Positions 1 to 45,500 of a stretch of DNA of 64,000 nt are shown here, piece by piece. A program made the position numbers and the translations under genes. Position 1 is the stretch's first letter. Every line of letters starts with the position of its first letter. The stretch is from positions 18,972,001 to 19,036,000 of the forward strand of contig CM119381.1 of the NCBI GenBank assembly GCA_051294905.1, written 5' to 3'. A model generated the notes under the pieces. It saw nothing but the letters and a program-made list of their open reading frames with translations. It searched no databases and had not been told where the DNA came from. The DNA comes from Botryllus schlosseri (lineage: Eukaryota).

Positions 1-505
1 GACTGCCATAATGAACACCAGAGTTATACGATCTATCAAGGCCGTAACTTCCGCACCCCAAACCCACAATTGCTGGAAGGGGAGCTCGAACAGGCCCAAA
101 ATTGTATCATTGGTTGTTTATATGAGTAGCTATTCAATTGAAAATTTTCGTCGCGCTTCCACGATTTCATATCTCTGGCGGTCTGGATTTAAATATTATT
201 ATTAATAAGAGAAAAATGCCCATGTTTTAGAGGATAGGCATATCTGTGCTGGAGATTACCACCCACTGAACAGGATTATGACTCTAGGATAAGAGGTGGG
301 CATCAGAACATTTTCAAAAGGGGCCACGGCCAAAGAAAGGTTGAGAACCGCTGTGCTAGACCATCTCCTTTTAACTTTGGTTAAAGACACAAATATCCTG
401 CACCTACAAATTTTGGACTCAAGCATTGTGAAGTTCGCGGTATCCATATTTTAAGAGTGGAACTGTGCCGTCTTGTAATTGGTGTGATTTTATTGAACAT
501 TTCAG

Positions 506-574
506 TATCCCGATATTAAAATTGTCGTTTCCAATGACAATATTAATATTGACTACCCCGTGAAATTTGTGCGG
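506..574 (+). CDS. TTC3: TTC3 exon (YPDIKIVVSNDNINIDYPVKFVR)
   Basis: ttcag| ... |gtaaat, phase 0/0; resembles the pre-TPR YxxITKIV segment. Confidence 0.6.
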
Positions 575-3500: not shown

Positions 3501-6500
3501 ATATCTCACCAACCGTTTTTGGTTGGCTAGAAGGTCTACTCACCCACCAGTCTGCCACATACGAATGCTCATGGATACTAAAACAACAGATAACGTCCGG
3601 TGTCAGGATCCAACACTTCAAAGGTCCGCAAATTGAGTATATGTGATATATATAAGTTTACAGGAGGTGTTCCCAACCGGGAAGTAATTCTTCCCTGGGT
3701 GGTATTGTGATGACTTCAAGGCGTGGTTTCCAAAAAAATTTGATTACAAAGAAAATTTTGTCCATTATATATTTAGGGCCTCTGAATCTGGACTAGTAAT
3801 GCCAGAGGAGGCAAACTAGGTAATCTGGTAAACTTGGTATTTTTATTTCAGATTCTGGCTCTCCTTCAGAAATTGTGAGTGTTTTATTCCTTTTTGAGAG
3901 TCAGTTGCTAGTGAAGATCAGGTCAGCCTTATGCTATCACCGATTTCATAGACAGTTCTTTTGATAGTTTCCAAAAGCTATTACCTTAAATTATGGTGAG
4001 TTGGTATTTTAGAAAATACTGTAAAGCGAACGTATGATGTACTGGAACAGCAAAAACTGTACAGATGTAGGCGCTGTTGAGCAAAACTGAACTGCTTGCG
4101 TCTGACAGCTCAACACTCAACACACAAGTCACGCAAGGCTGCAATCTGGTCTGGTAGTGGCGGGCTTCTACTCAAATAGATCACTCACGTAGGGTACATC
4201 TTCTTCCTGTGGTCGGTGGTACATATTTATTTTAACCAGATTACAAGATTGACATGTTACTGGAATGAAGTGTCATAAAATCTCTGGAAATTGCTGTAGC
4301 CTACTATTACTGTATCATTTGCAGCAAGAACCACATCCACTTTCAGCGGTTGCTGCTTGCTGGTATATATTTGTGGAAAACAGGCTGCAAGATTGCGATG
4401 TTGCTTGAATGAGGTGTCATATAATCTATGAATGTTGGAGTACTATCATTTTATTCTGTTTTGTTCGCCGCCCGGTACGCATTGACCCTAGCTTTCATTA
4501 AATATGTCATGTCCATTGAAAATCGCGAAACATATAGAGTACGCATCTTTCACTGTATGCAAATTTTCACCTTCTTCCAGATAGCTCGAAATCGCTCACT
4601 GCACGGAATTTCGCGAATCCCATTGTCGTGGTTTTGAGAACTGTGTACTAAGTGCTTTGCGCCCAGTTTTAGTAATATGAATCTCTACAGGAGAGTGTAA
4701 AATCTAGTCAGTTAGGATTCCATCATGATGAGTTCGGATGAGTATATTTAATAAACTTGGATTATATGTTACCAGATGAAATTCTAAAGCGTGTGAATGG
4801 CATTGTGGTTCACTGTTACTACAGCAATGTGTTTCAAGTCTAGCGTAACTCAAAATTCTTTCCTAATGTCCATGCTCTTCAGCGAGTCCTGAAGTGCGCA
4901 GGCAGCGACTTACGGAAGCATAGAGGCAAGCCATGTTGAATTTGAGTCCATGGGAATCAAATTAAACATTCACACGAGCATGGTTTGGTTGGGTGACCGA
5001 TTCGGGCACAGTTTCATGTATAGAATAGAAAACTCAATGCTTTTTAATGCTGGCTAGTTTTTTCATGTTCTCGAGAATTATTTCCGAACATCCACCTCAC
5101 TCTCATATAGACACTTTCAGTCTGACATCTTCACTGAAATATTTACTTTATGGGACTGCGGGAATACTACGGTGCTAAAACAGTATATTAGAGCCTCTTC
5201 TCAAATGATGTATCCGTTGCGTAATAATGTTCATGTGGTAGGTTGTTGAAGCCTGTCCCCTGTAACCGCCTTCATAAACCACCGACTACGCGGCAACAAT
5301 GACGTTTCGATTCCAAATTTTATTCCTTCCGCTTAATCAGTTGCAAAGACGTTCTTGACGGAGGGGTGTCATGTTTGCGAGAATTATAACGCGTCGTAAA
5401 TTGAGAGAAAATAACGAATTCAAAAGGAACATCGTAAAAATATATGTAGTATATGTTAAACACGAAAACAATATAATCTCCAGGGTATCGTGGAGTGGAT
5501 GCGTGCGCGCGAAACGCAGCGGCATTGCACAGTGGTAGGTAATGTTCTTCGAATATTATTATAGATACGTGGCAATTGCACGCGGTCGTGCAATAGTCGG
5601 ATGAATAGCACCGCGAGTGATGAATATGAATTGTTAGGTTGGACTGTGGAACATATAATAACTGCGATAGCTCTTGATTCGTCGATCTTATCGTTGTTAC
5701 GTACTGGATGTCGCGATATTCTATTCTATTACTGCGCGTCCACCGGAGCCGTTGCTTACGGGTAACTTGCCGGGTACAGTTTCGACGTTGTCGAATTCGG
5801 AGTCCAAACCCACTACACCGCCGCTTGTGTCACTTGGTGGTATCGCGGGACCGCCATTCTCCATCCACTGCCTCCAGAACTCGTTGAGGTTGTCGGATTT
5901 CGTGCTGGAGCTGGATGTCTTGTTGCCGCTGGTCTTGTTAGACGAGATTTCGTTTTCGGAAGACGCCATGAAGTTCTTGTTGATGTCGTCCTTGCGTCGC
6001 TTTTCTTCTTCAGCCGCTCGCCGGCGCATTTCTTTTTCCAAGCTCTCTTCTGCAGCGGCTTCTTCCTCTTTCATTTCGTCGATTGTGGCGTCGCGTCGCA
6101 TTGCGGGCGTTTGGAAAATGTCATGCTGCCCGGCGACTGTTCGCGACATGATTACTTGGCGCGTCTGCGTTTGCATACTGTACGGCTGTTTAGCGCCAAC
6201 TCCTTGGCATGTCGCAAATCCTTGGTGTCTGTCTTCTTGCACAAGGTGAGCGCGTACTTCGCCTTCTTCGTCTCGTTCGCTGGTGACTCGAAACCTGCTG
6301 TCCATGATGAAGTCGTGACCTGGCGCGTCGCTTTTGAAGCATTTCGCGTACCAGCGACGCAGGAACTTTACGCAGGCGCATTTGCGGACGTACTCTTGAA
6401 ATTGCCTCTGCGTGAGGATGTACACCGCCGGGTTCAGAAGGACACTGATAAAACTCAGTATCCGCACCGCGGTGTTTAGTTGAAAGCACGTGAAGCCGTC

Positions 6501-9500
6501 TGCGCCCATCAGTGCCTGCGAAAGAAAAAGCGTTGGCTCGGATCGAAAGTTTGATTTTGCCTGTCGCTCATACTTCTGTGGTGTAGAGGAGGTAGGTGAT
6601 ACGCTGAGGTAGCCAGCACAGCGCGAAAACGATCACGTACGTCAGTAGCGTGCGCGATACGCGTAACTGCTTCTCCGCATTTTTGTGGACTATATTCTTT
6701 TTCCGTGATGAAGAATGGCTTCCTGCAAAAGTTATGAAACGATAGGTCATTGATTCTTAGTTATGTGATTCTTTAGTAAATATCATTTTACCTCCGGTAC
6801 TTCGCTTCGACGAGGAAGAAAGTTTTCTGCGAGGCTGAGAGTTACTGGAGTTGTTCGAACTCTGCCGGTTGTAGGTCGAGGTGTGTTTGTGTCCGTCGTG
6901 GTCGTGGTTTTCATGGTTCAGGCGTGAGTTTGACCTCGAAATCAACCACGTTGAGCTCGTCCGGTCTTCGTGCACGTTTCTGCTTGCCCCGTCGTGCGGG
7001 TAGGAGTATCGTTGGTCTTTCCGTGATGTCCCGCTTCTGCTGTGAATTCCGCTGTCTGTAGACGTGGTACGATGTTAATTCTGTTCCTATTTACCTCTAT
7101 TCAGGAACGGTACGGAGGATATCAGTGTCGAAGTGTTTTTAGCTTTTCGATGTATTCTAGTTAGTGTTTGACTACCCGCTCTACTCAATAGTTTTCAGCT
7201 TTTTTAGGCAAACCTATCCTTGAAATGCTTATAAATGTACTCAATTAAATGAAATCGCTACTGCTACTTGCACTTCATTCGAAATTTGCAACGTTACTTC
7301 TACTTGAGCGCCAACGATGACTACCTTGACCACCTCCGTCCGGGTAGGACGTATGTACCATACCTGGAAACTCCGGCGTTCCATTAGCTGCATGCATCCG
7401 TTGCTCGTGATCACCGCTTGGGCCTTGTTGCATTTTGCTCGGCTTCCGATACAGTTGTCTCGTGACATCGTTCAGCACCGTACTTTGTACGTAATTGATT
7501 TCGGCGCTCGGCGTACGCACGTGCGCGACTCTATCGTCAGCGTTCGGGAAAAAATGATTGTGGTACGGGCTCGCAGATTCCACGGGCGTGGGTGGTGTCA
7601 AAGCCGACGTAGTCGTAGCGGCCGAGTATCTCTTGTCGACGCACGGTATCAGTGAGGTCTGGTCGGTAGCCATGCTATCCATGGAGCTACCATACGATCC
7701 GCCGCTTTCTCGTCTGCTACCCGAGTTTCGCGTTAGCAGTCTAGTCGAATGCGTCGTCCGCGCGCTTGCGGATGTGCCGTCGAGTATACTCGAGCCGTTG
7801 CTGATCCTGAGCAACTCTTCTTCTTCGTTTACTCCCTCTGTCTCGAGAGGATGCTCCTCGATTGTTTGCGGGATGTTTTCGTTTGTGGAATCGTGGTACA
7901 GCGAATACTTCGCTCTTGTGTTACCGCTGCGCATGCGTACGTGGTTTGCGTGACGTGTCGCGTCGTCGGATTCCAGCCCCGGCGCCGCTTCAGTTTCCAA
8001 ACTTCCGTTGTCCACCGCGTTTGCGGTTTCCAAACACTGGTTGTTAGCTGCGGTGAGTTTCTGGTATCGGTGAAGGTTGTCAGAGCCTTCCGGTTGGTAG
8101 TTGGACTCTTCGAAACTGAGGGCTCCTGGCGATTGTGGCGCGTTCCTCGAAGACACGAGAACTGCCGCGTTTTGGTCGCTGTTGTCGGTAAACGACCTGT
8201 TCTCCACGCCGTCGTGTGGCTTTCGCAAGAGGACGTACCGCATGAAATCCGACATACGTCGGCTCATGGAGTCGGTGCGGCTGCTACGCTGGTTCGTCTT
8301 TTCCCTGAGGTGTATCGAATGTGCCGCGTTGCCGTCGGTGCTCGACTGGTTAGCGTGGAAATGGGTGGTCGAAGTCTCGCTCATGCTAAGCGACATCCTG
8401 TTGCGAACCCGTCGTCCTATCAGGCAGGCGATGGACACGTAGCTGAACACGATGATGGCGAAAGGCACGAAGAAACCCAAGGCAAGGTTGATCACGAGGA
8501 CGTATATAGTCGCGGCCCGCGACAGGTTGGGGTAACACATCGATTGCAAGCCGTCGAATTCGCTGAAATGCTTGACGACCGCCTCGGCGGTTGTCGTTAT
8601 CATCGTTCTGTACACTATGGTAGTCATCTTGACCTGTGATGATAATAGGAAATTAAGACCAGATCATGGTTTTTGTTGATATGTTTAGCACACTCATTAC
8701 CACTTTTTGCCCTTCGAAATGCATGGCAGCGTTGTAGACGTCTGTGTATTCGTCCAGAGGAATGATGTCTCCAATTTCTGCGTCTATTGTGCCGTCCCAG
8801 TCTTCTTCGTTAAGGAGCTCTTCCCAATCATCTCCGAGTAAGTCTGCCCCATACTGTTCGAGTAGGTCTTCGTCGTTGCCTGAAAAAACACGAAGCTAAT
8901 AATCCACGGTTGTGGTACTTCCTTCGTTTCCGATTAGGCTACCTGAAATACCGTCTAGTTCGTCCAAGTTCTGCGGTGCGTATGTTTCCTCGATGCTAAC
9001 GAGCTCGTCGAAGCACAAGTGAAGATTCACGTTGCCGTAGCTTTGAACGTATTCAGCGTTAGTTTCCTCCGCTCTCGCCAACAGCGTGAAGCACGCGTCC
9101 AAGACTCCCATGTCGGCGAAATAGTTCACTTTCTGCTTTTCATACGGTCGAGTTGTGACTGCAACAGTACATATATCACGTAAAAAGTTTTTCAAGCCAT
9201 CTTATAATAATGCCAGTACATACTTGACGGGGCGTTCCATTTGCTTCTGCAAGAAAAATGTGAACGTTACATTAGATTCCTCCAATGTGGATATTCTGTT
9301 ACTTTGCAAACAACTGATTGATGAGTTATGATTACCGGAAACCCCGTTTGTATCTGTACAGTACATGGCAACGTTTACGTGTCACACACGTTTAGACGTG
9401 CCGGGGCCTACGATATTCAATGAATGACGTGCTTACTCCTTATCATTACCAACAATGAGTTTACTTTGGATCAAAGTCGAAGAACGAATGGCTAATTGGC

Positions 9501-12500
9501 TATCGAATATAGTCTATATCGGTCGACCCTCTCATTCGGTTCAACCTTATCGGGTCAAGCGAAACTGCCCAGTGCCCACCCGGCAAGCAACGTGAAGCCG
9601 CCCGACCGCAACCCATTAGTTTTTGGCACAAGAAGTTATATTGATGTACATTTTACAATGATACACACCCTTTTGGCAACCCCACGCTGGTGTAGTTGGT
9701 CCCGGATCGCCGGTCATACGCCAGCAGAGTGTGATTTCCTTGTTGCCCGGCGGTAGGTAGGTTGTCGCGATTCATCACACGACTCAAGCTGTCTGGGGAA
9801 TCGCTCTCGCTAGCGATTAAATCGGGATTGACCATCTCGGGCATCGTGAACGCCAAGGCTATTATCCACATGACGATACTGATGCCGATGATAATCTTCC
9901 TCTGAAAAAAGGCATTTCGTAAACACAACATCATAGTATGGGAAGGACCTTTTGTGGATTATTGCCAATTGTTCATCGATGCACAAAATGCGCTTGCTGA
10001 TGATATTGATACGCGCGTTTGACTGCATTATATATGAAGACATTCATAATTCCTTGATGCACTCGTTTGTCATTCTACTCACGTCGTATTTATACCGTTG
10101 ACACCTCATGGACTTCCATACGGCCGCGCACCTTTCAACGCTCATGCTCGCCAGGAGGAAGATGTTGACGTAATAATGAAAGTTGTACCACGAGTTGATG
10201 ATCCGCCAAGTCCGTTGTTTGCTCGGCAAGTCGTCGGCAAACGTCGATATGTTGGTGGTCAAGTTCATGTCGCCAGCGGCATATTGAGCTGGGAGGCAAA
10301 TTAAAATGTGTTGAACTACACGTGCGCGGGAGAACGATTGACGTGTTCATAATCCAGCTGCAACGCCGCTGATACGATATTGCACCGATGCAAGGATATT
10401 GCATTGCGGTTATCAGATTGTTCCCTGTGGAATAGGTATTTCTTATAGGGCGATCCGTTTGTGTTATCATGAACTGGATGTGCGCACACTTAATAACACC
10501 AAACCGTTGATTGATGGGTGAATTCAAGTTTCCGATGCTGGCCCTTCCAGCCGACAAGAACGCGTGTTGGCATTACGTAGTTGCGGAATGAATTACCGCT
10601 TCGTTGACATCCACATACATCATACCGATTGCGTATGATAAAACTGTGCCTGAAGTGAATTTTCGACTGCGGCCGAAGCGGAATGCTATCGTCATGCAGG
10701 CTACTAGAATTCGCGAACGCCAGCGTTACTGTTTACACGACCAATATGTAATACAGATGGTTCACACGGCTACTGTAACTGTAATCCGACGTGCCTTCTA
10801 TCGTGAGATTTTCCGCCGAAAAATGAGCATTAGCATACCTCGCACGCTATCCGACACGGTCGTAAGAGTTTATGGGTAAACGTCGAATCTAGTCGACAAT
10901 TCGATTACGAATGGCGTCGGACTATCGTAAAACATCAATGCGTGCGTTGTATTCGGTATTCTCGAGATAAGCGCTGTCCAAACCGTGGCATCTGTTCATT
11001 TTATGGGTTTGTTTGTTCGTTGTGTGGATTGCACCGTTTCAACCCGTCTCGATTGCTAAAATATGGCAGGAAATTTTATCAGTACCGCATTTAATTTTCA
11101 TAGCACTGCAAATTTCTTAAATTTGTTTTGGAAACGATATCAAAGCGATAATGGTTCCCCTATTGGTAGTAACACTTGTAACCAGCGTAGTTCCGCGCTC
11201 ACATTTACTGAAAAAAAGTAATTTAATAGCGGGCCGCGAAGAATTTGTTTAAAACCAATATTTGTCTTTCCCTGCCACCCTGTATTATCGTCATGCATGG
11301 TGGGGCGCACGCACGTAAGTTATTGTGATGGGACAATAAGTGTGGAAAATGCGCTGCGCTGTGTAGACGGTTGTACGTGACTAAACGAAAATTAAAAAAA
11401 AGTTGTGCTGGCCGTTCCTCATTGTTCATTACGTAGATTGAAAAATTACACATTCGAAATGCGCCGTGCATGTCATCCTACGTGGTGTTGGAGATTCCCG
11501 AAGGTACTGGCAAGTTCAGATGTGTTCGATGCAACGCTCTTATCAGATACAGTTTTGCGGTTGCGTTATCGCCTTTTCGCCTAAAAACCGTTACAGATTG
11601 GCAGCGATGTCACCTTCTATTCGCCGTTAGCCGTGTTCCGGCGTCGTTATTTATCGTGAAGGTGCCCACGAAACACTGCCACGCGATCAATCTTGTTTCC
11701 TGCATTTTCATTCAAGCTTGTGAACTTTCGTCAAGTCGAGATTGTCAATTTTATCCAGAAATATGCGTCCTTCATCGCCTGCCGTCGAAATGTATTCGCA
11801 CGACCCTCGGGATCAGCCCCGTTGACAGATTGTAGCTAGCGAACCGACGGTACCGCAAACCACCCGTGACGAGGCTATATTCTTCGGAAGAAGATGGCTT
11901 AAGCCGAATGTGTTGCTGTCACTTAACGTTGCCCTGGTTTGCGTTGGCCCGGACTGGGGATTATTCGGATTTGAGCAAGGCGGTGTTGCAACCGCTGTGG
12001 TCTGTCAGCATTTGTTTCTTGTTCAATTCAAATATCTGTCCTTCAATCGCCCGAGTCCACAGCAGACCAACGGGTTCTGCCAGCGCATTTTATGGTTAAT
12101 TAAGAGGCGGTTGTTTTGGGTTCGTTCTGTGTCGTAACCCCACCGTGATGGTTAATGAATTCCTCTTTAAGAACACTCACCGTGTCATAAATGCATTGCT
12201 ACATTGGTTGTGGCATGCTTTATCGCCGGCTATGTGTGTCATAAACTGGAGGAGGTGATAACTTACCACTCGATTCAAACATTTCTTGCTTCATCGCGAC
12301 CATGTTGTGGGTCATCACGCTGTTGCTGATGAGCCATATTAGGCACACTAACAGGTCAGTCAGGGCGATTTGCACCATGTAAACTGTGTGAACCGAGTTC
12401 CGAACCTGCCGAAAGAGAGTTAGAATATTACACGGCGATTCCCAGGCGATATCGATAACCGCCGAATCAGGTGTCATTGGCCTCAGTCACCATACTGGTT

Positions 12501-15500
12501 ATACTTATAGGTTACATTTTCCAAGGATGCTCAGTCGAAATCCGAACTCCGAATTGCATCAGATTCCGCAGTATGCATGGGTTGAGGACTTCGAGACGCG
12601 CCGTGTTTTGTTTGGAGAATTTATAGACTTATTTAGATGACGCGACATTCTGATCGTATGACGTATAACCGAAATTATCATTACTTTGTTGTGTTCAGCA
12701 AAGCAGATTATAACATATCGGTACGCACCTTATCTTCAACTGTAGCCTAAGTCGTCATTGTCTTGGATATAGAGCGTTGGCAATGTTGGAAATTCCGCGT
12801 TGTTTTACTGCACCGACACTAACTATGTTCATTGTTCATGTTGTGGTTCTAGGTCTACTTTTTAACAAACCGACATTTCATCGATTACGGTGTGTAGACG
12901 AAGCAACACCAAAGTCCGAACTCTTGGCTCCAGTGGTGATTTACTGTGCCCGGATGTCTTTCTAACGGATCTGGGGTTATTCCCTGGTGTGGCGCGGTGT
13001 GTATTATAGGCAGCGTTTGGTGTCATCGAGCATCTATCATCTCATATCAGGTTGATACAGCGTAATGGTGCACGTTGCCTGCTTTGAAGTGCCCGCTTTG
13101 TTACTTGTGTCGCGTAAGTAGCTGTTATTATTAGTTGATCTGATTCGAAATAGCACACTCGACTATGGTTATTACGCAGAGTTCTCATTTTAAGCCCCCT
13201 TCAACGTTCTATTTATTGGTCCTCTCCAATCTACTGTAACTAAACCGGCGTGGTTAGTGTCCTCTTGAAGATCGGTGGTTACAAAATTCACCCAGCTGCC
13301 ATGGCCGTGGTCTCTTTTACGGTGAAGATTGTACTGTCACACTGGCACAGCCCTTTGTCTTTGAATTAGTAAGAAATTATGATAAGTGGCCAGACTGGCC
13401 ACGGTCCATACAAGCCAAAAAGCGTGAAGCATCGTCGATGTATTTTAGAAGTATGGACGACCGTTACCGATGCCTCCATACTCAGTTTTATCGTATAGCT
13501 TTTTGTCAGTTATGGTGCTCGAGGCACATTTCATGAAACGGCGCGTGCCAACTAAAATTAGTTCGGCCTCGTTCCGTTGTTTCTAACTATAAACCGTTTT
13601 AGGCTCGTACCAACCTGCTTTTTATGGAGCAGCATGTAGAGCATGATTGAATTCAATATCCCCCCGAAGATGCACATCAGTATTATTCCCACATGTTTTC
13701 CGATCAGGGTGCCGAAATACGCTTCCAGTTCTTCGGCGCTGGCCATATTCCACGTTTCTGTGTTATATCCAACTTCCGAGCATGTATTCTTCGTTGCCCG
13801 CTGGCCTGCCGGCTTCAACCCTACGATTAGACTTATGGACGGTGAACCTAGTAATCACCCATCGCGTAGATTTTCTGTGAATATGCAAAATTAGGAAATA
13901 TCCGTCTAATAACCACGTTTCGCGTGGTGTAGACAGCGTATAGTCTGCACAAAAAATTGAATCTTGTGGACTAGTGATCTTTCATTTTCGCAATCCCCAT
14001 CTACAGAATGCGGTTCCGACAACGGCACGATATGCGTATAGACGCCAAGAGAAACTCAAGCTAACTAGATCAAGCTCTCTGCCGTTGAAAAAGACGAATA
14101 GCCTGCGGTAATCCGACGCTTATCTCCCGTGTCTGTGGACAATGCCTTTCTCTTTTTCAATGCAGCGCAATGGCTCGAGACCTCAAGTGTATATACAATC
14201 TGATCACTCCGAAGCCTTTTTAACGCTTGCGTTGCTTCGCCTTTTTCCCTACTCTTACTGTATGCGAGTGCGAGTGTGATAGCGTGAAAGGCTTGAATGG
14301 GAAAACAATCTTATTATGCTTTGATAATATTTCTTTGGTAGCGGTGTGGATTTATAAATAACCAGCTTAAACTGATAAACTATCGCCATATACTCTATTG
14401 TGAAAATTTGTAAAAAGGCTCCCGTTAACGCTTCTGAAGTCGGAAAGATAGCGGCTGTAAATTGGAACAACCGCAGCACTTTTCTATTAATACATTTCAA
14501 TCGTGGACTACAGTATATGCGCAGACTTATGCTTCAAATACCGACCGTCGGTCGGTTTTGAATTGTTTAGCGCAGCGCATGCGATGACATTGCGTTTCGA
14601 CTCTATAAACTCCGCATCCCACATTCGTATACAATTGCTCCATTATGATATCAATTATGTAGCCTTTGTAACTGAAACTTCGCATTATTGACGTAATGCG
14701 TTTTACGCAGACTCGACTCTCCGATGACTGTTTTCATCTTTTAGAAATTTCATTATTTTATTTCTTCCCCTCCTCCGTGACGTCGCAGCCAAGCAACACA
14801 AACGGGATGTCTTCGCCCCACACAGCAATTCGAATATCGAATTCGAATCCAGTGTTAATTGCGATGATCCAAATCGAGTACTGTAAGACGATATTTTCAA
14901 GTATTGATATTATACACCCTTTTTCCCTAAGAGTGATATTTTCATGTGGAATTGTAGCTACGATGTTTCTTAGCCAACGCGGAAGCTTTTAAACTTAAAT
15001 CAGTCGTATCACAGCATCCAAAACATATAGAACAAAGCTACGCAAGTTCGTAGAAATGACATTTGTGAAGTTGTGATCGACCGACGGCATTGTCACAAAG
15101 TGCAATGGCATTGATATGGCCGAGAAAATACTAAACTATCTTTATGTGGTGTAGTGCTGGCATTATTTTCCTTTTAGTCGCATAACAGGTACCTATTTCT
15201 CAACAGTAGGGCGATTTTTTTTACCTAAAAACGGAAGATTTGCATCTAAAGACGTAAGATTTCGACATTTGTTTGACCTTAAAAATTTTGATCTCATGTA
15301 TGTAAATTAGGCGTTTTTCCACATAATGTTAGAATTGTACTACTGTTCTTCATTTCTGGTTGGAACTGTCTGTCCGTACGAAGTATAGGCCTGAAATATT
15401 TTTTTACTCAAAACTGACAAATTTTTACATGAAAAAAACTTTATTTTACCGAAATATAAACCTGCGAAGAATCCCAGTAGTTGGCTACATCACGCATTAT

Positions 15501-36500: not shown

Positions 36501-39500
36501 AGATCGAAATGCCAGTAATCTAATTCTAATCTAATTTGGAAAATCTGAAAATTTTCTAGTTGTCCAAGTCTGGCGGTAAGTCGGCAATTCAGGAATCGTA
36601 AAAAATAACATCGGTCTGGTGTTAATTCACCGATGACCATCCATCTCGACAGAGACGGGAGTGGCGAGATAGCGTAGCGGTATCATCCACAGCTTCAACA
36701 CCAATGGTTTGTGGGTTCAAGTCCGAGGTCGACTTTAGAATTCCAACCCAAGTGTGGGAGGTTTATCTAGGCTTCTCCTCGCCATCTCATCCGCATGCGC
36801 GGTGTCTTGCAAAAAATCTAGAAGTGGGTCGTGCTATAATTCGGTAGTTAAGGAATCAGAAAAAACTAAGAAATATCGGCCTGGTGTAAATGACCATTGT
36901 AGCCGACAAACGCCATTAATACCACAGACAACAACTACATCTCGACACACCATGATTGCTAAGCAACACCGACAGCGACAAAACATTTAAGGTTGGAGAG
37001 GCGTGGACACTGAGGCAGGAGGTAAATAAATGATCGCGAGGAGCAGGTGACCTCTTGCAAGTAAGGGTAATTGGTCGCTAACTGTTTAAATGCAAGTGAT
37101 TCGATGATGAGTGGCGGCCCTTCATACTTCTTCCGGGATGTAACCGGCATGAAGTTCTTATATTTACGATCGACGCTATAACGCGATCGGCACGCTCTTA
37201 AAGTTAAGTTCGCATTATTCACGTGCTCGTAAGATGTAGGAATGTTCGTCAACCGGCGTTATCTTACTCAGAGCTTCATCTCGGAAGAAACGTAAGGATT
37301 ATTCTCACCAATGTGTACCATTTGACGTTGCTAGTCGAACCTGATTGACATCACCGTCGTGCATGATCTTACCCGCGCATATAGGGCGTGGGTTAGTGAT
37401 AAAATTTAAGTTACAATGTGCGCGGCAGCGTCGGGAACGCGGTGCCAATCGCCAGGTGCATTTCATGATACACGAGCATTTGTTACTGGAATGTATAGGA
37501 ATCAGAGATGAGCGGATTTGAAATTTCTATGACCTAATCCAATCCAAATCCGAACCTTCCAATCCAAATCCAAATCCTAATCCATAACTTTTTCATATTC
37601 AAGTCCATGTCCAATCCTAATCCGATTCCAACTGGAAATTCAGAAAAAATACTAATTTATGCAATGGAGGGATTCGAAAATTTTCTTTCACAACCAACGA
37701 TTCACTTGATTCAAGATAACTTAGTAACCATGAGTACATTAATAACTGATCTGAATAAAGTTTGTCGCCATTCGCCACACGACATTTCAATCTCCCAGAA
37801 AATTGGTAAATCCAATCCAAATCCTAATCCGCTCTGAAAAAAATCTCTAATCCAAATCCAATCCAAATCCGACAAAATTTCACAAATCCTGTTTTTTCAA
37901 AACCTAATCCTAATCCATGCTCATCTCTAATAGGAATAGAAACGTACTAGGAGGGAGTTGCAATATGTAAAAGCGGAGGTTGTATTTGAAATCGGCAGTC
38001 TCGTCTTCATTACCGCGGCGATAGTGATACGGTGATGTCTGGTTTCCCATGTCGGTGGTTAAGTTTGACGACACGGCCGCAGTCCGGTAAAATATCGCGT
38101 TACCTTAACGGTTCCTCGGTTCAGTGGCTGTGGTGAACTGGTGATGCGTTCCCGTTGTTACGTCTGACTTTCAATTTACGGTGTTAAGGCGAATTCACAC
38201 CTCCATTCCACTGTCTGTCTCATCTTAGTGGTGAGACGGTGAATGTACTTGTGTGTGGTGATTGGTGTCCAGAAGATTCACATAATAGTGCGTATCTCTA
38301 TGCTTGGCAGTAAACGGAACAACCCAGCGAAATTCGTTACATGCATGGGATGTCAGTTGGGATATCATTGCCGACTTGGATTTATTTGGGCTTATTCTTG
38401 GTTTTAGTTTTTCTCTGGATTTCATTACCGGAACTGTCAGACACGGGTAAAGCAACGATAAAACCGTCGCATACACTCGCATTATCGATGCCCATTGCCC
38501 ATACTCATCGTATATCGAAGGCAGCTAAGAACCGCTTTATCTATTGATATATTGAATTGCCAATCCAATTTGCATATGATGAGAAATCCCGTTTCAAGCT
38601 CGTTAGCCCGGTTGTGGTGCAGAAATTTGCTTGATCTCGCAAAAAACGTCAGCATCTCCCGCCTGAGAAGAAATCGACAAGCGATACGTGATCGTTGTTT
38701 ATTTATTCTGCGGATGTAATTGGGTATTAACCAATACTACGGCGGCGTTATCCGACTTGTTTGATTGGGGAAGCTGTGTTAAAAACGGATGTCTCGGTGT
38801 CCATGACGAGTGGTGTGTATACCGCAAATTCTCGCGGTTGGTTGATCGCAATTCTCGACCGTGTTTGTGGGTGATTTCCTCTATCCAGCACCGCCATACT
38901 CCACCACGCTTTCATTTCCGTATTGAAGACATCAGAACTCGGTCTAAATACCGGGCCCAATCATCCCGAACGTATCTGTCATGCAAGCGCATGATAGCGT
39001 ATAGCCGACGTGAATGACGCCACAAAACGGTTTAGAATTTTTGTGAAATGTTCATACATTCCAAATCCGCGGGTTCGATGCGCGGAAATGGCCTGGCCGG
39101 GATTGTTTGTTGACACTTTGGTGTTGATGCCCCAATGATGAAACGCGGCGGAATTTCGGGTGTCGACCATCGATCAAACCCCTACGTAATGAAACGATTC
39201 GTCACTATTCTGTGACGCAAGGCTTATCTGCAAGCGACATGTTGTTCACCCCGCCATTCACGCCTGTTCGGATGGAATGGATGTTCCCTACGAGTTCTCA
39301 AGGGTTCGGTGTCCAACACATTCATCAACGCTTGCTTACGATCTGGGGTCTTGCTGTTTGGATGTTCACTTTCTGGGGACTCCGAAAATTGAAGCGATGA
39401 AGTTACGTCGCGATTCAATACCTTTATTCTCATTCAGTCTGTGATAACCGTATTCTCCAAAAGCGCGCGGTTGACACGTGGTTTATTATGACCAATCCCT

Positions 39501-42500
39501 GGTATTTTTGTTCTACTTCTTTTTATAATGATATGGTTAGGGTTAGGGTTGCATTTAAAACAAACGGTGTTTTAAAACACTTTGTTAAAAACATGTTTTA
39601 AACAGTATTTTAAACAAAGGCCTTTTAAAAAAATGTTTTTCAAGTTGTAAAATCATGCCATAATTGTGTAAATACAAAAAACATGTGTGAGCCTACAGAC
39701 AATTGCCACCCGATATAGCCGACTTATACGACATGGAATGGTTGGAAACCTCTAAGTAGTCGGCTCAACAGCAATAGTACGTAGATATTTCGTCAAAGGT
39801 GCTATATTTACCTTCTATTTTCAATTGTCAATGTCAATCCACTATGACGTCCCAGTTGAATATTCGTGACGTCATGGCTTGGAAAAACAATCAAAAACAT
39901 GTTTTAAACAAGGGCCTTGTCTTAAACATGTTTGTTTTTAATTGATTTTTGTTTTAAATGCAATCCTGGATATCGTGCTGGATCCATATTTTTGCACTTA
40001 TGTCTTCTATTGTAAGTGTTGTTTACTGCATAAACTGCATGTGTTTACGATCGTGTCGTAAATCTTTGCTGTTTCCATTTGACTTCCGGTCGAATCGATC
40101 GGCAGCCCTTTGTAGTTAATCGCGAACATGGCTAAATTAAACAACTATAGCGTCAGGTGATACTATCGGATATGTTCGGTTTTCTGATGGGTGTTTGTCC
40201 GTGTCTGTTTCGCAAACAAGCATGCCGAAACTATAAAAAATAACCGCTGCATCAGACACCAGTCCTGTGCCCTAATTTTCGTAACCTCCGACCAACGTAA
40301 CGTAACGGTACTACTATGTGCGGTTTATATGCAATGATCCGTTTAGAACGGCTGTGATGTCATGTACGGTGCGTTACGGCTTCTTTGTGAAAGTTCGAGA
40401 GACTCCACAATTCATTGGAGACCCTATGGTCTTTGTGCGATTGCCGGGTGTATAAAGAAGTTTCACTTGCGGTAGAATGCGAGTGATCATAAACTCGCCG
40501 TATACTGATACGAATACGATTGACTTAGGTTTGTTTTGATTCGAATGTGGCGTGGCTGTCGTTGAATGACATTCACAAAATTTCGTGGTGTATCGCACTC
40601 GTACGCATCAGTCGCAATACCCTCGTTGAGTCGCTGTATACATCGGGTTCAACGGTGTGGCTTTCCAGTCTCATTTCCGAGCAAAATATTTTCAAACAAG
40701 CGTAAAGGAGCCAAGAACTTGTAATCCACCCACGACAATTGCTCCCGTCGACGGTATATGTGCCAATGAGATTACGAACGACTTTACGGTGTCACTGCAC
40801 GAAATTGTGACTTACGACCTCATAATCTCGAGTATTTCGCGTGAATCACGTCTCGTATCTCTTGATTTGCGATGCGTTGAACTGGGTGCGCGTCCTAAAA
40901 GCCTTGGATAGAGTTAGTACACTTTTGGGTGGATTTGTTTTGTTTCGGAATCAGATGAGGTCTCGATTGCCACTGCCTTTCGTGGCCTTCCTTCTCGCTA
41001 AAGCCACACAGGATTCCTCTATGAATTAATCAATATTTAGGCGTTATAGGGCAATAGAAGCCGTTGTCTTTATCTCGCTAAGTGGATCCTTGCCAATTAT
41101 CGTATGAACTTGGCAATCGGTATGTAGGGAATTCACCTGACATTCCCCAAGGACTTGCCAAATTTTGATTTGATATCAGCACAAGATCTCTCATCGAGTT
41201 GTCGACTAGACATAGCGACCATAAATTTATCACCACGACAGAATCGGGCGTTGAAGCATTCGCTGGGATTGACAGAGGTGATGGTAGTAATTCCTGGTTA
41301 CGAATTTAAAAATTCCTTACGGTTGGGTGACGGGTGTTGGGATTATGGCCCACGAACGAATGCTTTCATGTAGGTGGTCTGCATTTGGTAACCGCATTAC
41401 GATAGCCTAGGTAGGCGATGATAGTTTTGATTTGGGTATCGGCCAGATTTTATGGTATTCGTATTCACTACACATCCGGGAGTTATTTCTAATCAAACGA
41501 TGTTTGGAGCTTTCTGGCGCCTTTCAATGGGTAATCTTCCGCGTTTAAATAGGGATTATGTTCGACGCGTTTTTGTAAAGAGCATATTGAGGATGACATA
41601 GCGGTATTTTCACTTACATAACCGAGTTGCGTTGAGCCGGGTGGCAACCGAAGGGAAGGCTGTTGCGCCGAGCCAATTCATTTATTCTGTTCATTTGTGA
41701 CCCCTCGAAAGTCTAACGAAGTATGAAGCGGCTTCAAATGTACGTACTGTATAGATGCGAACGCAACAATGACATTTGTCGAATGGACATCGTAATCCTG
41801 ACCAATGTCTATGGAGTCCTTGCTAGCGTTTTTTTTTTAACAATGACGCTCGAAATGCGGAGGGAAGTTCCACCCTCTCACACTGACACCTATTAAGGAC
41901 TCGGATATTAACTTGCGCGTGGTCAAAGCTATACTCACTACAGCAAACAATCACCTTAGCGTGGCTGGTAGAGAAAACGGGCAATGGTTTTTCAGATCAA
42001 ATGAAGTTTGATTTAAAATGGAATCCTCATCTCTTCCAGATTCTGTTTCCGTCGTTAATTTTAAATTCCGTATCCCAAAAAATACTCAAGATGAGCATAT
42101 GTGGCCTCTGTCGAGTATATTTCACTAATTATGCCTCGGCAATGCATTGAAGTCTGTTTTTAAGTATCCTTCGAAATTTTGGTGCGATGTCGAAACCAAC
42201 CGAATCCAATTTCATGCAAAACATCGAACTAAACGAACGGAATATCACTTTCATGTACTATAAATTTGAAATTCTGTCCTGATTCTGGCACTCGCACTCG
42301 GAGCAAAAACGCGCATCCAATCCAGTTCCAGAAATACATGTCGGATTCCTGTCCAGGGCGGTTAGAATCCAAGATCTCGATCCTGAACGTGTCTACCGGC
42401 TGGGCGACGCCAGCTGCATGCTGCGTTCACCTCAAAATGGTTGGGATCCACTTGCTTCGCATCGCCGCGAATCATTTTCGGATAAGGGCCCCGTTCTCCT

Positions 42501-45500
42501 CAATCGCTGTCGCGTCGTGGGCTGTCGCCCGGGAGATTTGCGGGTTCAAAGTTATTAATGATCGCATGCTCATTTCAGACGTCTGTCTACGGCCGTGGCC
42601 GCATTCGGCTTGTTGGTTGTTGGCCTTTTCGCCCGGAAAAACACGAGCGCTTTGACTCGATGAGTGATAATCCTGTTGTTGTCAATCATCCTTTTGCTCT
42701 CGAATATGATCGCGGATGTTAACCTTGAACTTTGCGGTTTAACGAGAGCTGTCTTACTGTTGTGCGTGTGATTGCGCCGGGATATATTGTGTTATCCTAT
42801 GGCGATCGGAATTTTTCTTACTGATGTCTGGATTTAATCTGATGAAAATTGATCTGTGTTCCCGTACGATGGGAAGCGAGTTTTTGACATTATGCGATGT
42901 AAACGCGGGGATTATACAGCGTTGCTATCAGATCTCATGCGAATATGCGGTGCTTTTGCGGGGTTCATAATCAGCGCTACTCGACCGAACAAGTTCTGGC
43001 TGAACCTCGATATGGTCCGTGTGGTATAGCGATTATTGCTGTCGGTCTCGTGCTTGTCGGAATTTGTTACTGTTGTAGGGTACCATGCTTTTGACTGCGT
43101 TCATTGTTTGATGATAATCACATATTTGTTCTAGGAGAGCAATATAATATATATAATATCACAATTGTAGCTGTATCTTTAGTTTGAGTCATTGCGCTGT
43201 CTACTTCGGTGTACGTACTGCATGGGTCCCAACACTCCGTGCGCGAGAGTATTTTGTGAGGTCCGCGACGACATTTGGGATTTCAAGTATTCGAAAATAA
43301 TATTCAACTGCCACATATCTTTTTTAGATTTGAGAACTTGAGCTCTAAAACTACTCCAAAAACTTGAAATGTTATCATGCTTCACTATCACGTCACTTTC
43401 AAAGGCTACCGTGCGATGGAAGTCAGCTATTATGTCGCATTTCTAGTTCATGATGATAAAACATGATCCGTTGATGATTCGTGACGGAAAATTTGGATTT
43501 GGGCTCGAATGACTCGAATTCGGACTGACTGGGTGATAAAATAAAAATGACTCGAGTTGAGTCGGGTCAAACGTTTAAAGTCAGAGAAGGACTTGTGACT
43601 CGGAACGCCTAATACTTGGCTTAGTTGGAAATAGTACATTGAATACCGCTGTTATTGATACCGCTGCCCGAGCACAGTAGAGTTTGAGACCCCTGACGTG
43701 GTGTATCGTGTGGAGCCCTTTCCCCCGTCGTGGATCCGCTATCAAGGCGACGACATTGCTGATACGATGTCACTATCGACTATGATGTTACCTGGTGCGC
43801 TGCTGCTCATTTATCTCGGGTTGCACAGTTCGCCTGAGATTGGATGGTTCGTTGTTCTTCGTTCTGATGGTACATTCGTGTGACTGGTACTGTTTCAGCA
43901 GATTGCATCTATCAACCTGTCGACAGACGCACCACTTGTTATGTCACAAGCTTTGATTGTTTGACTGCCGATGCGTATCTGTTTGACAGTACTCCCAGCG
44001 CTTTGCTGTTGCGTGTATTGTGCTTTTGCATTTCGCAGGTTAAGTTGGGGATTAACAAAGTCTTGACATCGGTGCGAGTTATCAGCGGGGTTTTGACACT
44101 TCTTAACGCTCCGTAAACACTTCGCAAGTGGCTCTTCACCATCAAGTGTCAAACTGTCCGAGTGAAAAATGCTCATCGCTAGACGGGTTTTCCCGAATGC
44201 TCAACGCTAAATAAACAATGATCATCGCTTTTGCGAATTGTAATCGCCTGTGGTTCCTATGAACCATTACGTTAGCTTGGAAGTTTTACCGGTATTGGTA
44301 TTTGTATTAATATACTTTACTAATGAAACCACTGTATAGTGCTTATCACAGCTAAGGTCTTTTGCATCAAAAGCAAATTAATTTCATCAACCCGCGCAAA
44401 CTTGTTAGAAGTACTCTACGACCTTAAAAATATCATGGAACTGCGTGGCGAGAAATCTGGAAATAAATTCGAAATAGTAACCGATTTCCGATAATGAATG
44501 ACACTAGGTTGCTGAAAAAGGGATGATTAATGCCAATATGCAACAATTACAAAGCCGAATTTAATTAATAATTTCGCGCCAGTACATGATGTTCGATGCG
44601 TGGATTTGACCACAAAATAATCCGGTATTGTTACGCCACCTTCAATCGAATTTGAGTCACCAAACTCACATAAACTCGGATCGACACACATAGGCGAGAT
44701 TATGACTTGAACTTGCAGCTGAAGCGCAAACCACTAACAGGCAACAGGTCTCCGATGACTCGTGCGAATTCGCGACGCCACCTGCTGTGACGTAATAGTC
44801 GAACGCCGAAGGTTGATTACTGCGCGCCGGTGTGTCAGAACTCAAGCTGTTTTTTTTCTTGCCAACGTCACCGTTACGCTTACAAATCGGCGGTACTCGA
44901 ATCTCATTTTGATTAATGCGCTGCGCTAACCGCTGTTAATTTGATATCCGTCGTCTACTATCACAACTGATTCTTTACAAGTACAGTAGTAACACACGAG
45001 TGACTGTATTATTATTCAGGCTTAAGCGAAGCACGCACGCCCGCGCTACAATAATAATATCAAGGCTCTCTCTCTTTCTTGAACAGGTACGCGCGAGAGA
45101 CCCGCACGCGATGACAATCGTGCAAAATCAGGCCGAGATCGCGGCCGACTTCCACAAGTGGATCGAGAAGGGCTCCGTCGAGTTCCTGAAGAGACATTTC
45201 GCGGACGCCTGCAAGACCTACAAGCTCGCGGTGGACTTGATGGCGACGCACAAACAGGTCTGATGAGCAATCGGCCGCGAGCGTGTAATTAAGCGATTCG
45301 CAATGCAGTTAATCACGGCTCCGCGAAGCGCGCGTAATCCAAAGCTGTTTTCGTGTCGTCTTTAATGATGCGCTGTCGGTGACTCAATATGGATTCATAT
45401 TTTACGGCGTTTATTCTTCTCATATAATACGCTTGAGACTCGTGCGATATATTTACTTGCAGAAATCGCGGAGTAATGTTTTTTTCGGTGTCTTAAGTGC

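What the first reader, a model, noticed from the sequence alone, without database searches (positions are those of the whole stretch)
3875..45086. Complete 11-exon giant GPCR gene nested antisense inside a 41-kb intron of TTC3
Seen: TTC3 exons on both sides of 3875-45086 are collinear with the family and join in phase 0, while a full spliced GPCR occupies 13746-5721 on the other strand. This intron is about 18 times longer than the next largest in the gene (~2.3 kb). Known: nested antisense genes occur, and host/guest expression is often anti-correlated. Inference: a ubiquitin-ligase host and a signalling receptor share one locus, so transcriptional interference could couple them. I do not recall a receptor nested in vertebrate TTC3/DZIP3, so the arrangement may be lineage-specific.
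Basis: partly seen in the sequence, partly recalled or inferred. Interest (0 to 1): 0.7.

Follow-up and report, generated by a model that had tools for sequence, protein, structure and literature searches.

The report
GPCR gene nested inside TTC3 intron
In this sea-squirt genome a large orphan receptor gene lies backwards inside the one giant intron of a TTC3-like ubiquitin-ligase gene, and Styela clava has the same layout, so it is a real, inherited but ordinary nested gene pair.

Summary
The sequence features are real. A TTC3/DZIP3-type RING E3 ligase gene runs on the + strand. Its TPR exons lie at 798-1749 and its domain and RING exons at 45087-63666. A complete class A GPCR of about 1,200 aa lies on the - strand (CDS 13746-5721, polyA site about 5306).

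RNA reads confirm the host splices 955>1379 and 1569>1634. They also show a spliced, polyadenylated GPCR mRNA.

The Styela clava orthologue (1650 aa) is collinear with both host halves. Its annotated gene carries the orthologous GPCR, antisense, in the same intron (44.6 kb), also just after a roughly 20-nt micro-exon with the same phases. Misassembly is therefore excluded, and the nesting predates the split of these two ascidians.

The junction 3874>45087 itself was not seen in reads. It rests on homology, frame and splice sites. A spliced-leader acceptor at 45087, which would mean a separate 3' transcript, is not excluded.

Transcriptional interference is untested.

The guest domain is not CpG-depleted, whereas the host exon clusters are. 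This holds in both species and is unexplained.

The scan noted another nested-GPCR case elsewhere in this genome (s1-249680, unchecked).

This is a new member of a known kind, of modest interest.

The parts
798..955 (+). Host (TTC3-like) exon A, TPR repeat
   Evidence: Pfam TPR_2. Aligns to P0001 residues 250-302. RNA joint 955>1379 with GT..AG in X1, X11 and X13, and loose ends mark the acceptor at 798.
1379..1569 (+). Host exon B, second TPR
   Evidence: RNA joints 955>1379 and 1567/9>1632/4. Aligns to P0001 residues 302-363.
1634..1749 (+). Host exon C (Lys-rich linker). The start is shown by RNA and the end is inferred. An alternative GT donor sits after 1693.
   Evidence: The joint to 1634 is in RNA. 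The frame is open to the donor AAG|GTGTTG at 1749. Read depth is about 0 beyond 1700, and the donor 1693|GTAAAA would also keep frame into 3852.
1801..2670 (.). Old interspersed repeat inside the host intron C-D
   Evidence: Many copies at 74-80% identity across the genome. Very high contig depth in X1.
3311..3344 (+). Candidate host micro-exon D (acidic, phase 0 to 1)
   Evidence: Strong acceptor and donor, and in frame. Same phases and acidic content as Styela exon L001:18242-18281. No RNA evidence, because it is too short to be laid.
3852..3874 (+). Candidate host micro-exon E (23 nt, phase 1 to 0), last exon before the giant intron
   Evidence: Polypyrimidine-cag acceptor and GTGAGT donor. 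Styela has a 20-nt micro-exon with the same phases at the same place, L001:18516-18535. No RNA evidence.
3875..45086 (+). Inferred giant host intron (41,212 nt)
   Evidence: Collinearity with P0001. The equivalent Styela intron is 44.6 kb. The junction was not seen in reads.
5306..5720 (-). Guest GPCR 3' UTR, with AATAAA (minus strand) at 5319-5324 and the mRNA end at about 5306
   Evidence: The 3,312-nt X1 contig starts at 5306. Raw RNA reads from X11, X13 and X15 cover 5301-6300. The signal is read.
5721..13746 (-). Guest GPCR coding region (about 1,190-1,230 aa, about 11 exons). TM1 about 13700-13615, TM2 12405-12298, TM3 with ERC motif 10226-10071, TM4 9910-9740, acidic ECL2 about 9200-8660, TM5 and long ICL3 8633-7364, TM6 with CWLP motif 6722-6574, TM7 with NPAVY motif and tail 6515-5721.
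   Evidence: 7tm_1 hits on three exons in profile order. Conserved blocks with the Styela nested gene. ORF map and rough splice model. PDB sequence matches to class A peptide receptors.
6516..6573 (-). RNA-verified guest intron between the TM6 and TM7 exons
   Evidence: Joint 6514>6573 (cut +1) with ends CT..AC, which is GT..AG on the minus strand. Seen in the X1 contig and in two X11 reads.
13747..45086 (.). 31.3 kb of non-coding DNA upstream of the guest and inside the host intron. It includes repeats at 24876-25441 and 37503-37928 and is not CpG-depleted.
   Evidence: No Pfam hit in its 10 longest ORFs. No Rfam family or tRNA. Repeats. CpG o/e 1.23. No sequence conservation with Styela above a reversed-sequence control.
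45087..45257 (+). Host exon F, the first exon after the giant intron. It has an in-frame ATG at 45119.
   Evidence: Aligns to P0001 461-504 and P0002 7-52. The acceptor is a long polypyrimidine run followed by cag, in phase 0.
47527..63666 (+). Host 3' exon cluster (at least 18 exons). TTC3_DZIP3 domain at 49961-50131, 50862-50969 and 51028-51126. RING-H2 at 63095-63175 and 63523-63666 (stop included).
   Evidence: Pfam hits. Collinear tblastn HSPs to P0001 and P0002. Intron sizes of 53-2,269 nt.

Best explanation
This is one host gene, a TTC3/DZIP3-family RING-H2 E3 ubiquitin ligase of about 66 kb that starts about 3 kb before the window. Its coding exons form two clusters separated by one giant intron (3875-45086).

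Inside that intron, on the opposite strand, sits an independent gene for a very large orphan class A (peptide-receptor-like) GPCR. Its polyA site lies 1.4 kb from the host's micro-exon donor, and about 31 kb of non-coding DNA lies upstream of its start codon. The guest has its own polyA signal and is spliced on its own strand.

The pair was inherited from a common ancestor of this ascidian and Styela clava.

My inference on why it persists is this. A guest gene and its flanking regulatory DNA, once inside an intron, cannot easily be moved out without damaging the host. The intron is therefore large because it houses the guest locus, not because the two genes need each other. Any regulatory coupling is unproven.

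Shown: the exons on both sides, homologue collinearity, the orthologous nesting in Styela, guest transcription and host 5' splicing.

Inferred: micro-exons D and E, the junction 3874>45087, and the passive-entrapment reading.
For: - Domains: TPR upstream, TTC3_DZIP3_dom and RING downstream. P0001 carries TTC3_DZIP3_dom, wHTH_TTC3, the TTC3 helical domain and RING.
- Collinearity of P0001 with both sides of the intron. Further 5' exons lie just upstream of the window on the same contig. No second exon-by-exon match to P0001 appeared elsewhere in the genome, only isolated single-domain hits.
- The Styela locus L001 holds one annotated 73.7-kb gene with a nested minus-strand 1258-aa 7tm_1 gene. 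That gene lies in the 44.6-kb intron that follows a 20-nt micro-exon.
- The nested receptors are orthologous: 66-78% DNA identity in four exons and 10 conserved protein blocks in order.
- In Styela and in a third species' transcript (L002), the first exon after the intron is coding, carries no ATG and differs by an in-frame indel. It therefore needs upstream coding exons.
- The window chain A-F is open in one frame with canonical sites.
- RNA shows host joints 955>1379 and 1569>1634. No read-through and no joint from exon C to anywhere up to 6700 was listed. The guest contig has a minus-strand intron and ends at 5306, next to AATAAA.
- The window has no N runs.
Against: - No read or contig was seen that joins 3874 to 45087, or that contains micro-exons D or E.
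- RNA depth over exon C stops near 1700, not 1749, so the exact 3' end of exon C is uncertain.
- The window lacks a counterpart of the Lys/Glu-rich exon that precedes the F-equivalent exon in Styela.
- Exon F has an in-frame ATG 32 nt after its acceptor, and earlier notes of this scan report spliced-leader trans-splicing in this genome. A separate 3' transcript is therefore possible.
- The 40-kb guest domain is not CpG-depleted while the host exon clusters are. In Ciona, repeats in introns of methylated genes are methylated with the domain (PMC3827831). The pattern would be simpler if there were two transcription units.
Confidence: 0.75

Rival explanations
1. There are two transcription units. 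The 3' part (45087-63666) is a gene of its own. Its mRNA 5' end is made by spliced-leader trans-splicing at the acceptor 45086|45087, with ATG 45119 as the start codon. The 5' TPR part is a separate short gene or isoform. The GPCR would then be intergenic (or sit in an outron) rather than nested in an intron. A milder version has both the long cis-spliced mRNA and a short trans-spliced isoform.
For: - An in-frame ATG lies 32 nt after a strong acceptor.
- Earlier notes of this scan describe SL trans-splicing and acceptor-preceded ORFs in this genome (unchecked by me).
- The CpG-depleted 5' block ends at about 5000, and depletion resumes only after about 46000. The same two-block pattern is sharper in Styela.
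- All named Pfam domains of the family lie in the 3' part.
- The junction was not seen in reads.
Against: - Transcripts of exons A-C show no terminal exon, no read-through and no listed joint to any place up to 6700, so they must splice to something farther downstream.
- In Styela and the L002 species the first post-intron exon is coding without an ATG.
- In Styela, CpG depletion resumes about 0.5 kb upstream of that exon rather than downstream of it. That is unlike an unmethylated promoter.
- From my own memory of the UniProt entry, not tested here, vertebrate TTC3 has the same order of two TPR pairs followed by the domain.
Confidence: 0.15
2. Functional coupling. Host transcription through the intron and antisense guest transcription interfere with each other, so the ligase and the receptor are expressed in a mutually exclusive way. 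Selection for this coupling keeps the arrangement.
For: - The arrangement, orientation and rough geometry are kept in two species. The distance from guest start to the next host exon is 31.3 kb against 30.4 kb, and the guest's 3' end faces the host donor 1.4-1.8 kb away.
- Interference by nested genes is described in general terms (title and abstract of PMC3192792).
Against: - There are no expression data at cell level.
- Both genes are detected in each of the three bulk RNA runs.
- Conservation of nesting is also expected under neutral entrapment.
- No non-coding sequence conservation above the control was found in the intron.
Confidence: 0.15
3. Assembly artefact. The two host halves were wrongly joined around an unrelated GPCR locus.
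For: None, beyond the absence of a junction-spanning read in my one call.
Against: - The window has no gaps.
- The same order, orientation and intron position occur in an independent chromosome-scale assembly of another species.
- The upstream host exons continue on the same contig.
Confidence: 0.02

Closest known systems
TIMP genes nested antisense in an intron of synapsin genes
   Same: A multi-exon protein-coding guest lies in reverse orientation inside one intron of an unrelated host, at a conserved position across species. Ciona is among those species (PMC2825198).
   Different: SYN-TIMP is conserved across most Metazoa. Here conservation is shown only between two ascidians. The guest is a very large GPCR with about 31 kb of its own upstream DNA, and the host is a ubiquitin ligase.
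Vertebrate TTC3 / DZIP3 E3 ubiquitin ligases
   Same: TTC3_DZIP3 domain, winged-helix and helical TTC3 domains in the Styela orthologue, a C-terminal RING-H2 and N-terminal TPRs.
   Different: There is a single locus in this genome, and the orthology to TTC3 versus DZIP3 is unresolved. From my own memory, untested, no receptor gene is nested in human TTC3 or DZIP3.
Class A peptide-type GPCRs (bombesin receptor subtype-3/GRPR, galanin, endothelin, C3a receptor)
   Same: 7tm_1 profile hits. The TM6 exon matches BRS3 at E 7e-6 and the TM3 exon matches C3aR weakly at E 0.06. CWLP and NPxxY motifs are present, and the large second extracellular loop recalls C3aR.
   Different: There is no clear orthologue. 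ERC replaces DRY. The protein is about 1,200 aa, with an acidic ECL2 of about 230 aa and an ICL3 of more than 450 aa. The ligand and coupling are unknown.
LRRTM genes nested in alpha-catenin genes
   Same: A nested membrane-protein guest in a long host intron, with lineage-specific origin and loss (PMC3933685, abstract only).
   Different: The genes and the lineage (jawed vertebrates) are different. I read only the abstract.

Membership tests
Nested (intronic, antisense) protein-coding gene pair | Host exons on both sides of the guest belong to one transcript | tested here: inconclusive
   Support comes from collinearity with one Styela protein, the single annotated Styela gene, and a frame- and phase-consistent chain. 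No junction-spanning read was obtained.
Nested (intronic, antisense) protein-coding gene pair | The guest lies wholly within one host intron on the opposite strand | tested here: met
   The guest mRNA end is at 5306 and its ATG at 13746, both inside 3875-45086. The strand is given by the GT..AG intron read on the minus strand and by the polyA signal. The position of the 5' UTR is unknown.
Nested (intronic, antisense) protein-coding gene pair | The guest is an independently expressed, intact gene | tested here: met
   A 3,312-nt spliced contig and raw RNA reads in three further runs. An open 7TM reading frame from ATG to stop. The orthologue is conserved.
TTC3/DZIP3 E3 ligase family | TTC3_DZIP3 domain (PF19179) | tested here: met
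   Two window exons hit the profile at E 2.4e-9 and 3.6e-6, at consecutive profile positions.
TTC3/DZIP3 E3 ligase family | C-terminal RING-H2 finger | tested here: met
   zf-RING_2 and zf-rbx1 hits on 63505-63666, with the first half of the finger at 63095-63175.
TTC3/DZIP3 E3 ligase family | E3 ligase activity and substrates | not testable with these tools
   This needs biochemistry.
Rhodopsin-class (class A) GPCR | Seven TM helices matching the 7tm_1 profile, with TM3 E/DRY-type, TM6 CWxP and TM7 NPxxY motifs | tested here: met
   Three exons hit 7tm_1 in profile order, though each is below the whole-protein cut-off. The Styela orthologue carries a recorded 7tm_1 hit. The motifs ERC, CWLP and NPAVY are read.
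Rhodopsin-class (class A) GPCR | Assignment to a named receptor subfamily or ligand | tested here: not met
   Only exon-level similarity to BRS3/GRPR/galanin (TM6) and C3aR (TM3) was found, with no consistent best family.

The most novel reading that the evidence does not exclude
The guest locus (GPCR plus about 30 kb upstream) may be an insulated, germline-unmethylated chromatin compartment embedded in a gene-body-methylated host gene, kept so in two ascidians. That would mean polymerase passage through a 40-kb intron does not by itself bring gene-body methylation. Alternatively, the host may in effect run as two transcription units that are stitched together or resolved by cis- or SL trans-splicing at 45087.
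Probability: 0.3. Interest if true: 0.55.

Novelty: new member of a known kind. Interest (0 to 1): 0.3.

Why it matters
Nested antisense genes are common in animals, so the arrangement itself is not surprising. It has three uses.

First, it corrects and annotates two genes: a TTC3-like ligase with micro-exons and a roughly 1,200-aa orphan GPCR.

Second, it gives a host/guest pair conserved between two ascidians, for which many single-cell RNA data sets exist. Interference can therefore be tested rather than assumed.

Third, the sharp CpG-depletion boundaries around the guest domain, in two species, offer a natural test of what sets the limits of gene-body methylation in an invertebrate chordate.

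Tried and rejected
- Direct RNA proof of 3874>45087. My one read-laying run was placed on 701-6700. It could not show the far acceptor, and only 22 of 80 loose ends were printed, none at 1693, 1749 or 3874.
This was uninformative.
- Two searches for further full-length homologues returned only P0001 and P0002. Synteny could therefore not be extended to other tunicates, amphioxus or vertebrates.
- P0002 (1220 aa) first looked like evidence for a short separate gene. It is a 5'-truncated transcript contig that begins with an adapter and 35 nt of intron, and it is open right from the acceptor. I rejected it as such evidence.
- L009, L010 and L011 are other TTC3_DZIP3-domain loci of unknown organisms. 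The gene there is compact, with no GPCR within about 9 kb upstream. The N-terminal TPR exons were not found either, so this is inconclusive.
- A counterpart in the window of the Styela Lys/Glu-rich exon: no convincing candidate.
- Conserved non-coding elements between the two introns: no better than a reversed-sequence control. The collinear tblastx mini-hits are an effect of sum statistics.
- Other genes in 14-45 kb: no Pfam hit in the 10 longest ORFs, no Rfam family and no tRNA.
- The dips in RNA depth at 1701-1749 and beyond about 6200 are not interpreted, because the tool warns that dips are no finding.
- Literature searches for this pair found nothing specific.
Full report
**What is in the window.** The window is a gap-free stretch of contig C11 of a 495-Mb genome. 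Earlier notes of this scan call the animal a stolidobranch ascidian, and the best homologues are from Styela clava.

On the + strand the ORF fragments upstream of 3875 carry TPR repeats. Those downstream of 45086 carry the TTC3/DZIP3 domain (PF19179, two consecutive exons) and a C-terminal RING-H2 finger.

On the - strand, between 13746 and 5721, several ORF blocks hit the rhodopsin-family profile 7tm_1 in profile order.

**The host gene.** A search of 1.8 billion representative proteins with the domain exon returned four proteins. The best is P0001, Styela clava XP_039249643, of 1650 aa. It was earlier named 'E3 ubiquitin-protein ligase TTC3-like'.

P0001 aligns collinearly with both sides of the proposed intron. 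Residues 224-363 match 714-1559, and residues 461-1647 match 45129-63642. Residues 59-251 match exons 1.5-2.7 kb upstream of the window on the same contig. No second locus in the genome matches P0001 exon by exon; the hits on contigs C15, C8 and C9 are isolated single-domain matches.

P0001 carries TTC3_DZIP3_dom, the TTC3 winged-helix and helical domains, and a RING.

P0002 (1220 aa) starts at the equivalent of exon F and at first suggested a separate short gene. Its source is a transcript contig that begins with a sequencing adapter followed by 35 nt of intron, and its reading frame is open from the acceptor onward. It is simply truncated.

**RNA evidence (window 701-6700; one contig run and three raw-read RNA runs).**
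- Host splices 955>1379 and 1569>1634 are seen in several runs, and loose ends mark the acceptor at 798.
- Beyond about 1700 there is no host coverage.
- The candidate micro-exons (3311-3344, 34 nt; 3852-3874, 23 nt) are too short to be laid, so their absence says nothing.
- For the guest, a 3,312-nt contig covers 5306-6515 and 6574-6699. Its 58-nt intron reads GT..AG on the minus strand.
- Raw reads from all three RNA runs cover 5301-6300.
- An AATAAA on the minus strand sits at 5319-5324, just before the contig end at 5306.
- The receptor gene is therefore transcribed, spliced and polyadenylated.
- The junction 3874>45087 was not tested. This was my only read-laying run.

**The junction by inference.** The chain 798-955, 1379-1569, 1634-1749, 3311-3344, 3852-3874, 45087-45257 is open in one frame. 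Each boundary is a canonical acceptor and donor. A shorter path, 1693>3852, also keeps frame.

The Styela gene has the same design:
- a Lys-rich exon;
- an acidic 40-nt exon that ends in phase 1;
- a 20-nt micro-exon that ends in phase 0 with a GTGAGT donor;
- then a 44.6-kb intron.

After its giant intron Styela has an extra 57-nt Lys/Glu-rich exon. The third species (L002) has it too, with an in-frame one-codon difference and no ATG. In those species the post-intron exons must therefore be joined to upstream coding exons. I found no counterpart of that exon in the window.

**The guest and its orthologue.** In the Styela locus a 1258-aa 7tm_1 gene is annotated on the minus strand at 19990-32714, inside that same intron.

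Four window GPCR exons match it at 66-78% DNA identity in the same order and orientation. Ten protein blocks are conserved, covering TM1 to TM7, parts of the long loops and the tail.

A rough splice model gives 1,231 aa in 13 exons. Its last junction is exactly the RNA-verified one.

The receptor has ERC in place of DRY, CWLP in TM6 and NPAVY in TM7. It has a roughly 230-aa acidic second extracellular loop and a third intracellular loop of more than 450 aa.

Exon-level searches of solved structures point to peptide-type class A receptors:
- TM6 matches bombesin receptor subtype-3 at E 7e-6.
- TM3 matches the C3a receptor at E 0.06.

There is no consistent subfamily. I call it an orphan.

**The rest of the intron.** The 31.3 kb between the guest ATG and exon F holds no recognisable protein domain, Rfam family or tRNA. 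It does hold interspersed repeats, including a young roughly 430-nt family at 37503-37928.

It shows no sequence conservation with the Styela intron above a reversed-sequence control.

The geometry is nevertheless similar in the two species:
- Guest start to the next host exon is 31.3 kb here and 30.4 kb in Styela.
- Host donor to the guest stop codon is 1.8 kb here and 1.5 kb in Styela.
- The giant intron is 18 times the next largest host intron here and about 39 times in Styela.

**An unexpected feature.**

| Region | Styela CpG o/e | Window CpG o/e |
|---|---|---|
| Host 5' exon cluster | 0.65 | 0.70 (1-3874) |
| Spacer up to the guest 3' end | 0.53 | 0.78 (3875-5305) |
| Guest gene | 1.11 | 1.34 |
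| Guest upstream DNA | 1.11 | 1.23 |
| Host 3' exon cluster | 0.58 | 1.08 (mosaic) |
| Flanking DNA | 1.05 and 0.90 | not measured |

The host-versus-guest differences are significant in 500-nt bins in both species.

In ascidians CpG depletion is the footprint of germline gene-body methylation. In Ciona, repeats lying in introns of methylated genes are methylated along with the domain (PMC3827831). A 40-kb undepleted block inside a depleted gene is therefore not expected.

Either the guest domain is protected from host gene-body methylation, or the host is, at least in the germ line, two transcription units.

The second reading connects with a rival I cannot exclude. Earlier notes report spliced-leader trans-splicing in this genome. 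The acceptor at 45087 is followed 32 nt later by an in-frame ATG, so a separate or additional trans-spliced 3' mRNA is possible.

Three points speak against full separation:
- Exons A-C have no terminal exon in the RNA data.
- The post-intron exons in the two other species are coding and lack an ATG.
- In Styela, depletion resumes about 0.5 kb upstream of the first post-intron exon.

**Comparison with what is known.** Conserved antisense nesting of a protein-coding guest in a host intron is a known kind of arrangement. The classic case is TIMP in synapsin, which also holds in Ciona (PMC2825198). LRRTM in alpha-catenin is another (PMC3933685, abstract).

I found no paper on a TTC3-GPCR pair. 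From my own memory, untested, vertebrate TTC3 and DZIP3 hold no receptor gene.

The scan's notes list another nested-GPCR case elsewhere in this genome (s1-249680, unchecked). That lowers the surprise further.

**Verdict.** The exact junction and the micro-exons are well-supported inferences, not observations. I put the single-gene reading at about 0.75 and the exact junction 3874>45087 at about 0.7.

The idea of regulatory coupling is untested. Both genes are present in the same bulk RNA samples.

This is a new member of a known kind. The CpG boundary pattern is the one feature worth following up.

Noticed in passing
window 1-5305 versus 5306-45086 versus 45087-63666; L001 10001-19989 versus 19990-63133 versus 63134-83703: CpG observed/expected is low in the host exon clusters and normal in the whole guest domain. 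The boundaries are sharp, at the guest's 3' end and near the first post-intron host exon, and the pattern appears in both species. It suggests an unmethylated compartment inside a methylated gene body, or two transcription units.
   Followed up: partly
window 37503-37928: A repeat of about 430 nt is present in many copies at 97-98% identity across all large contigs. It is probably a recently active short non-autonomous element.
   Followed up: partly
window 1801-2670 and 24876-25441: Two older interspersed repeat families, at 74-85% identity to many copies. The first lies in a host intron and has very high depth in the contigs of run X1.
   Followed up: partly
window 1634-1749: RNA depth over host exon C stops near 1700. 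An alternative donor after 1693 would skip the Lys-rich and acidic segments and still keep frame into 3852. This could be alternative splicing, but the tool warns that dips in depth are unreliable.
   Followed up: no
window 5306-6700: In the raw-read runs the depth over the GPCR's last exon falls more than 50-fold beyond about 6200, within a single exon. Six X13 reads break at 6068 with 9 foreign letters before the adapter. The cause could be 3' bias, a filter effect or a short transcript.
   Followed up: no
window 8656-9201 (minus strand): A very acidic stretch (many D/E residues) lies between TM4 and TM5 of the receptor. It is partly conserved with Styela (block 9150-8971) and agrees with the scan's separate note on a giant acidic ECL2.
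   Followed up: partly
window 30751-31089 and 36343-36569: Two short tandem duplications (169 nt x 2 and 117 nt x 1.9) lie in the non-coding part of the intron.
   Followed up: no
L009 8285-17690: A much more compact TTC3_DZIP3-domain gene of about 8 kb lies on a genomic contig of an unknown organism. No GPCR lies within about 9 kb upstream. This may be a lineage without the giant intron.
   Followed up: partly
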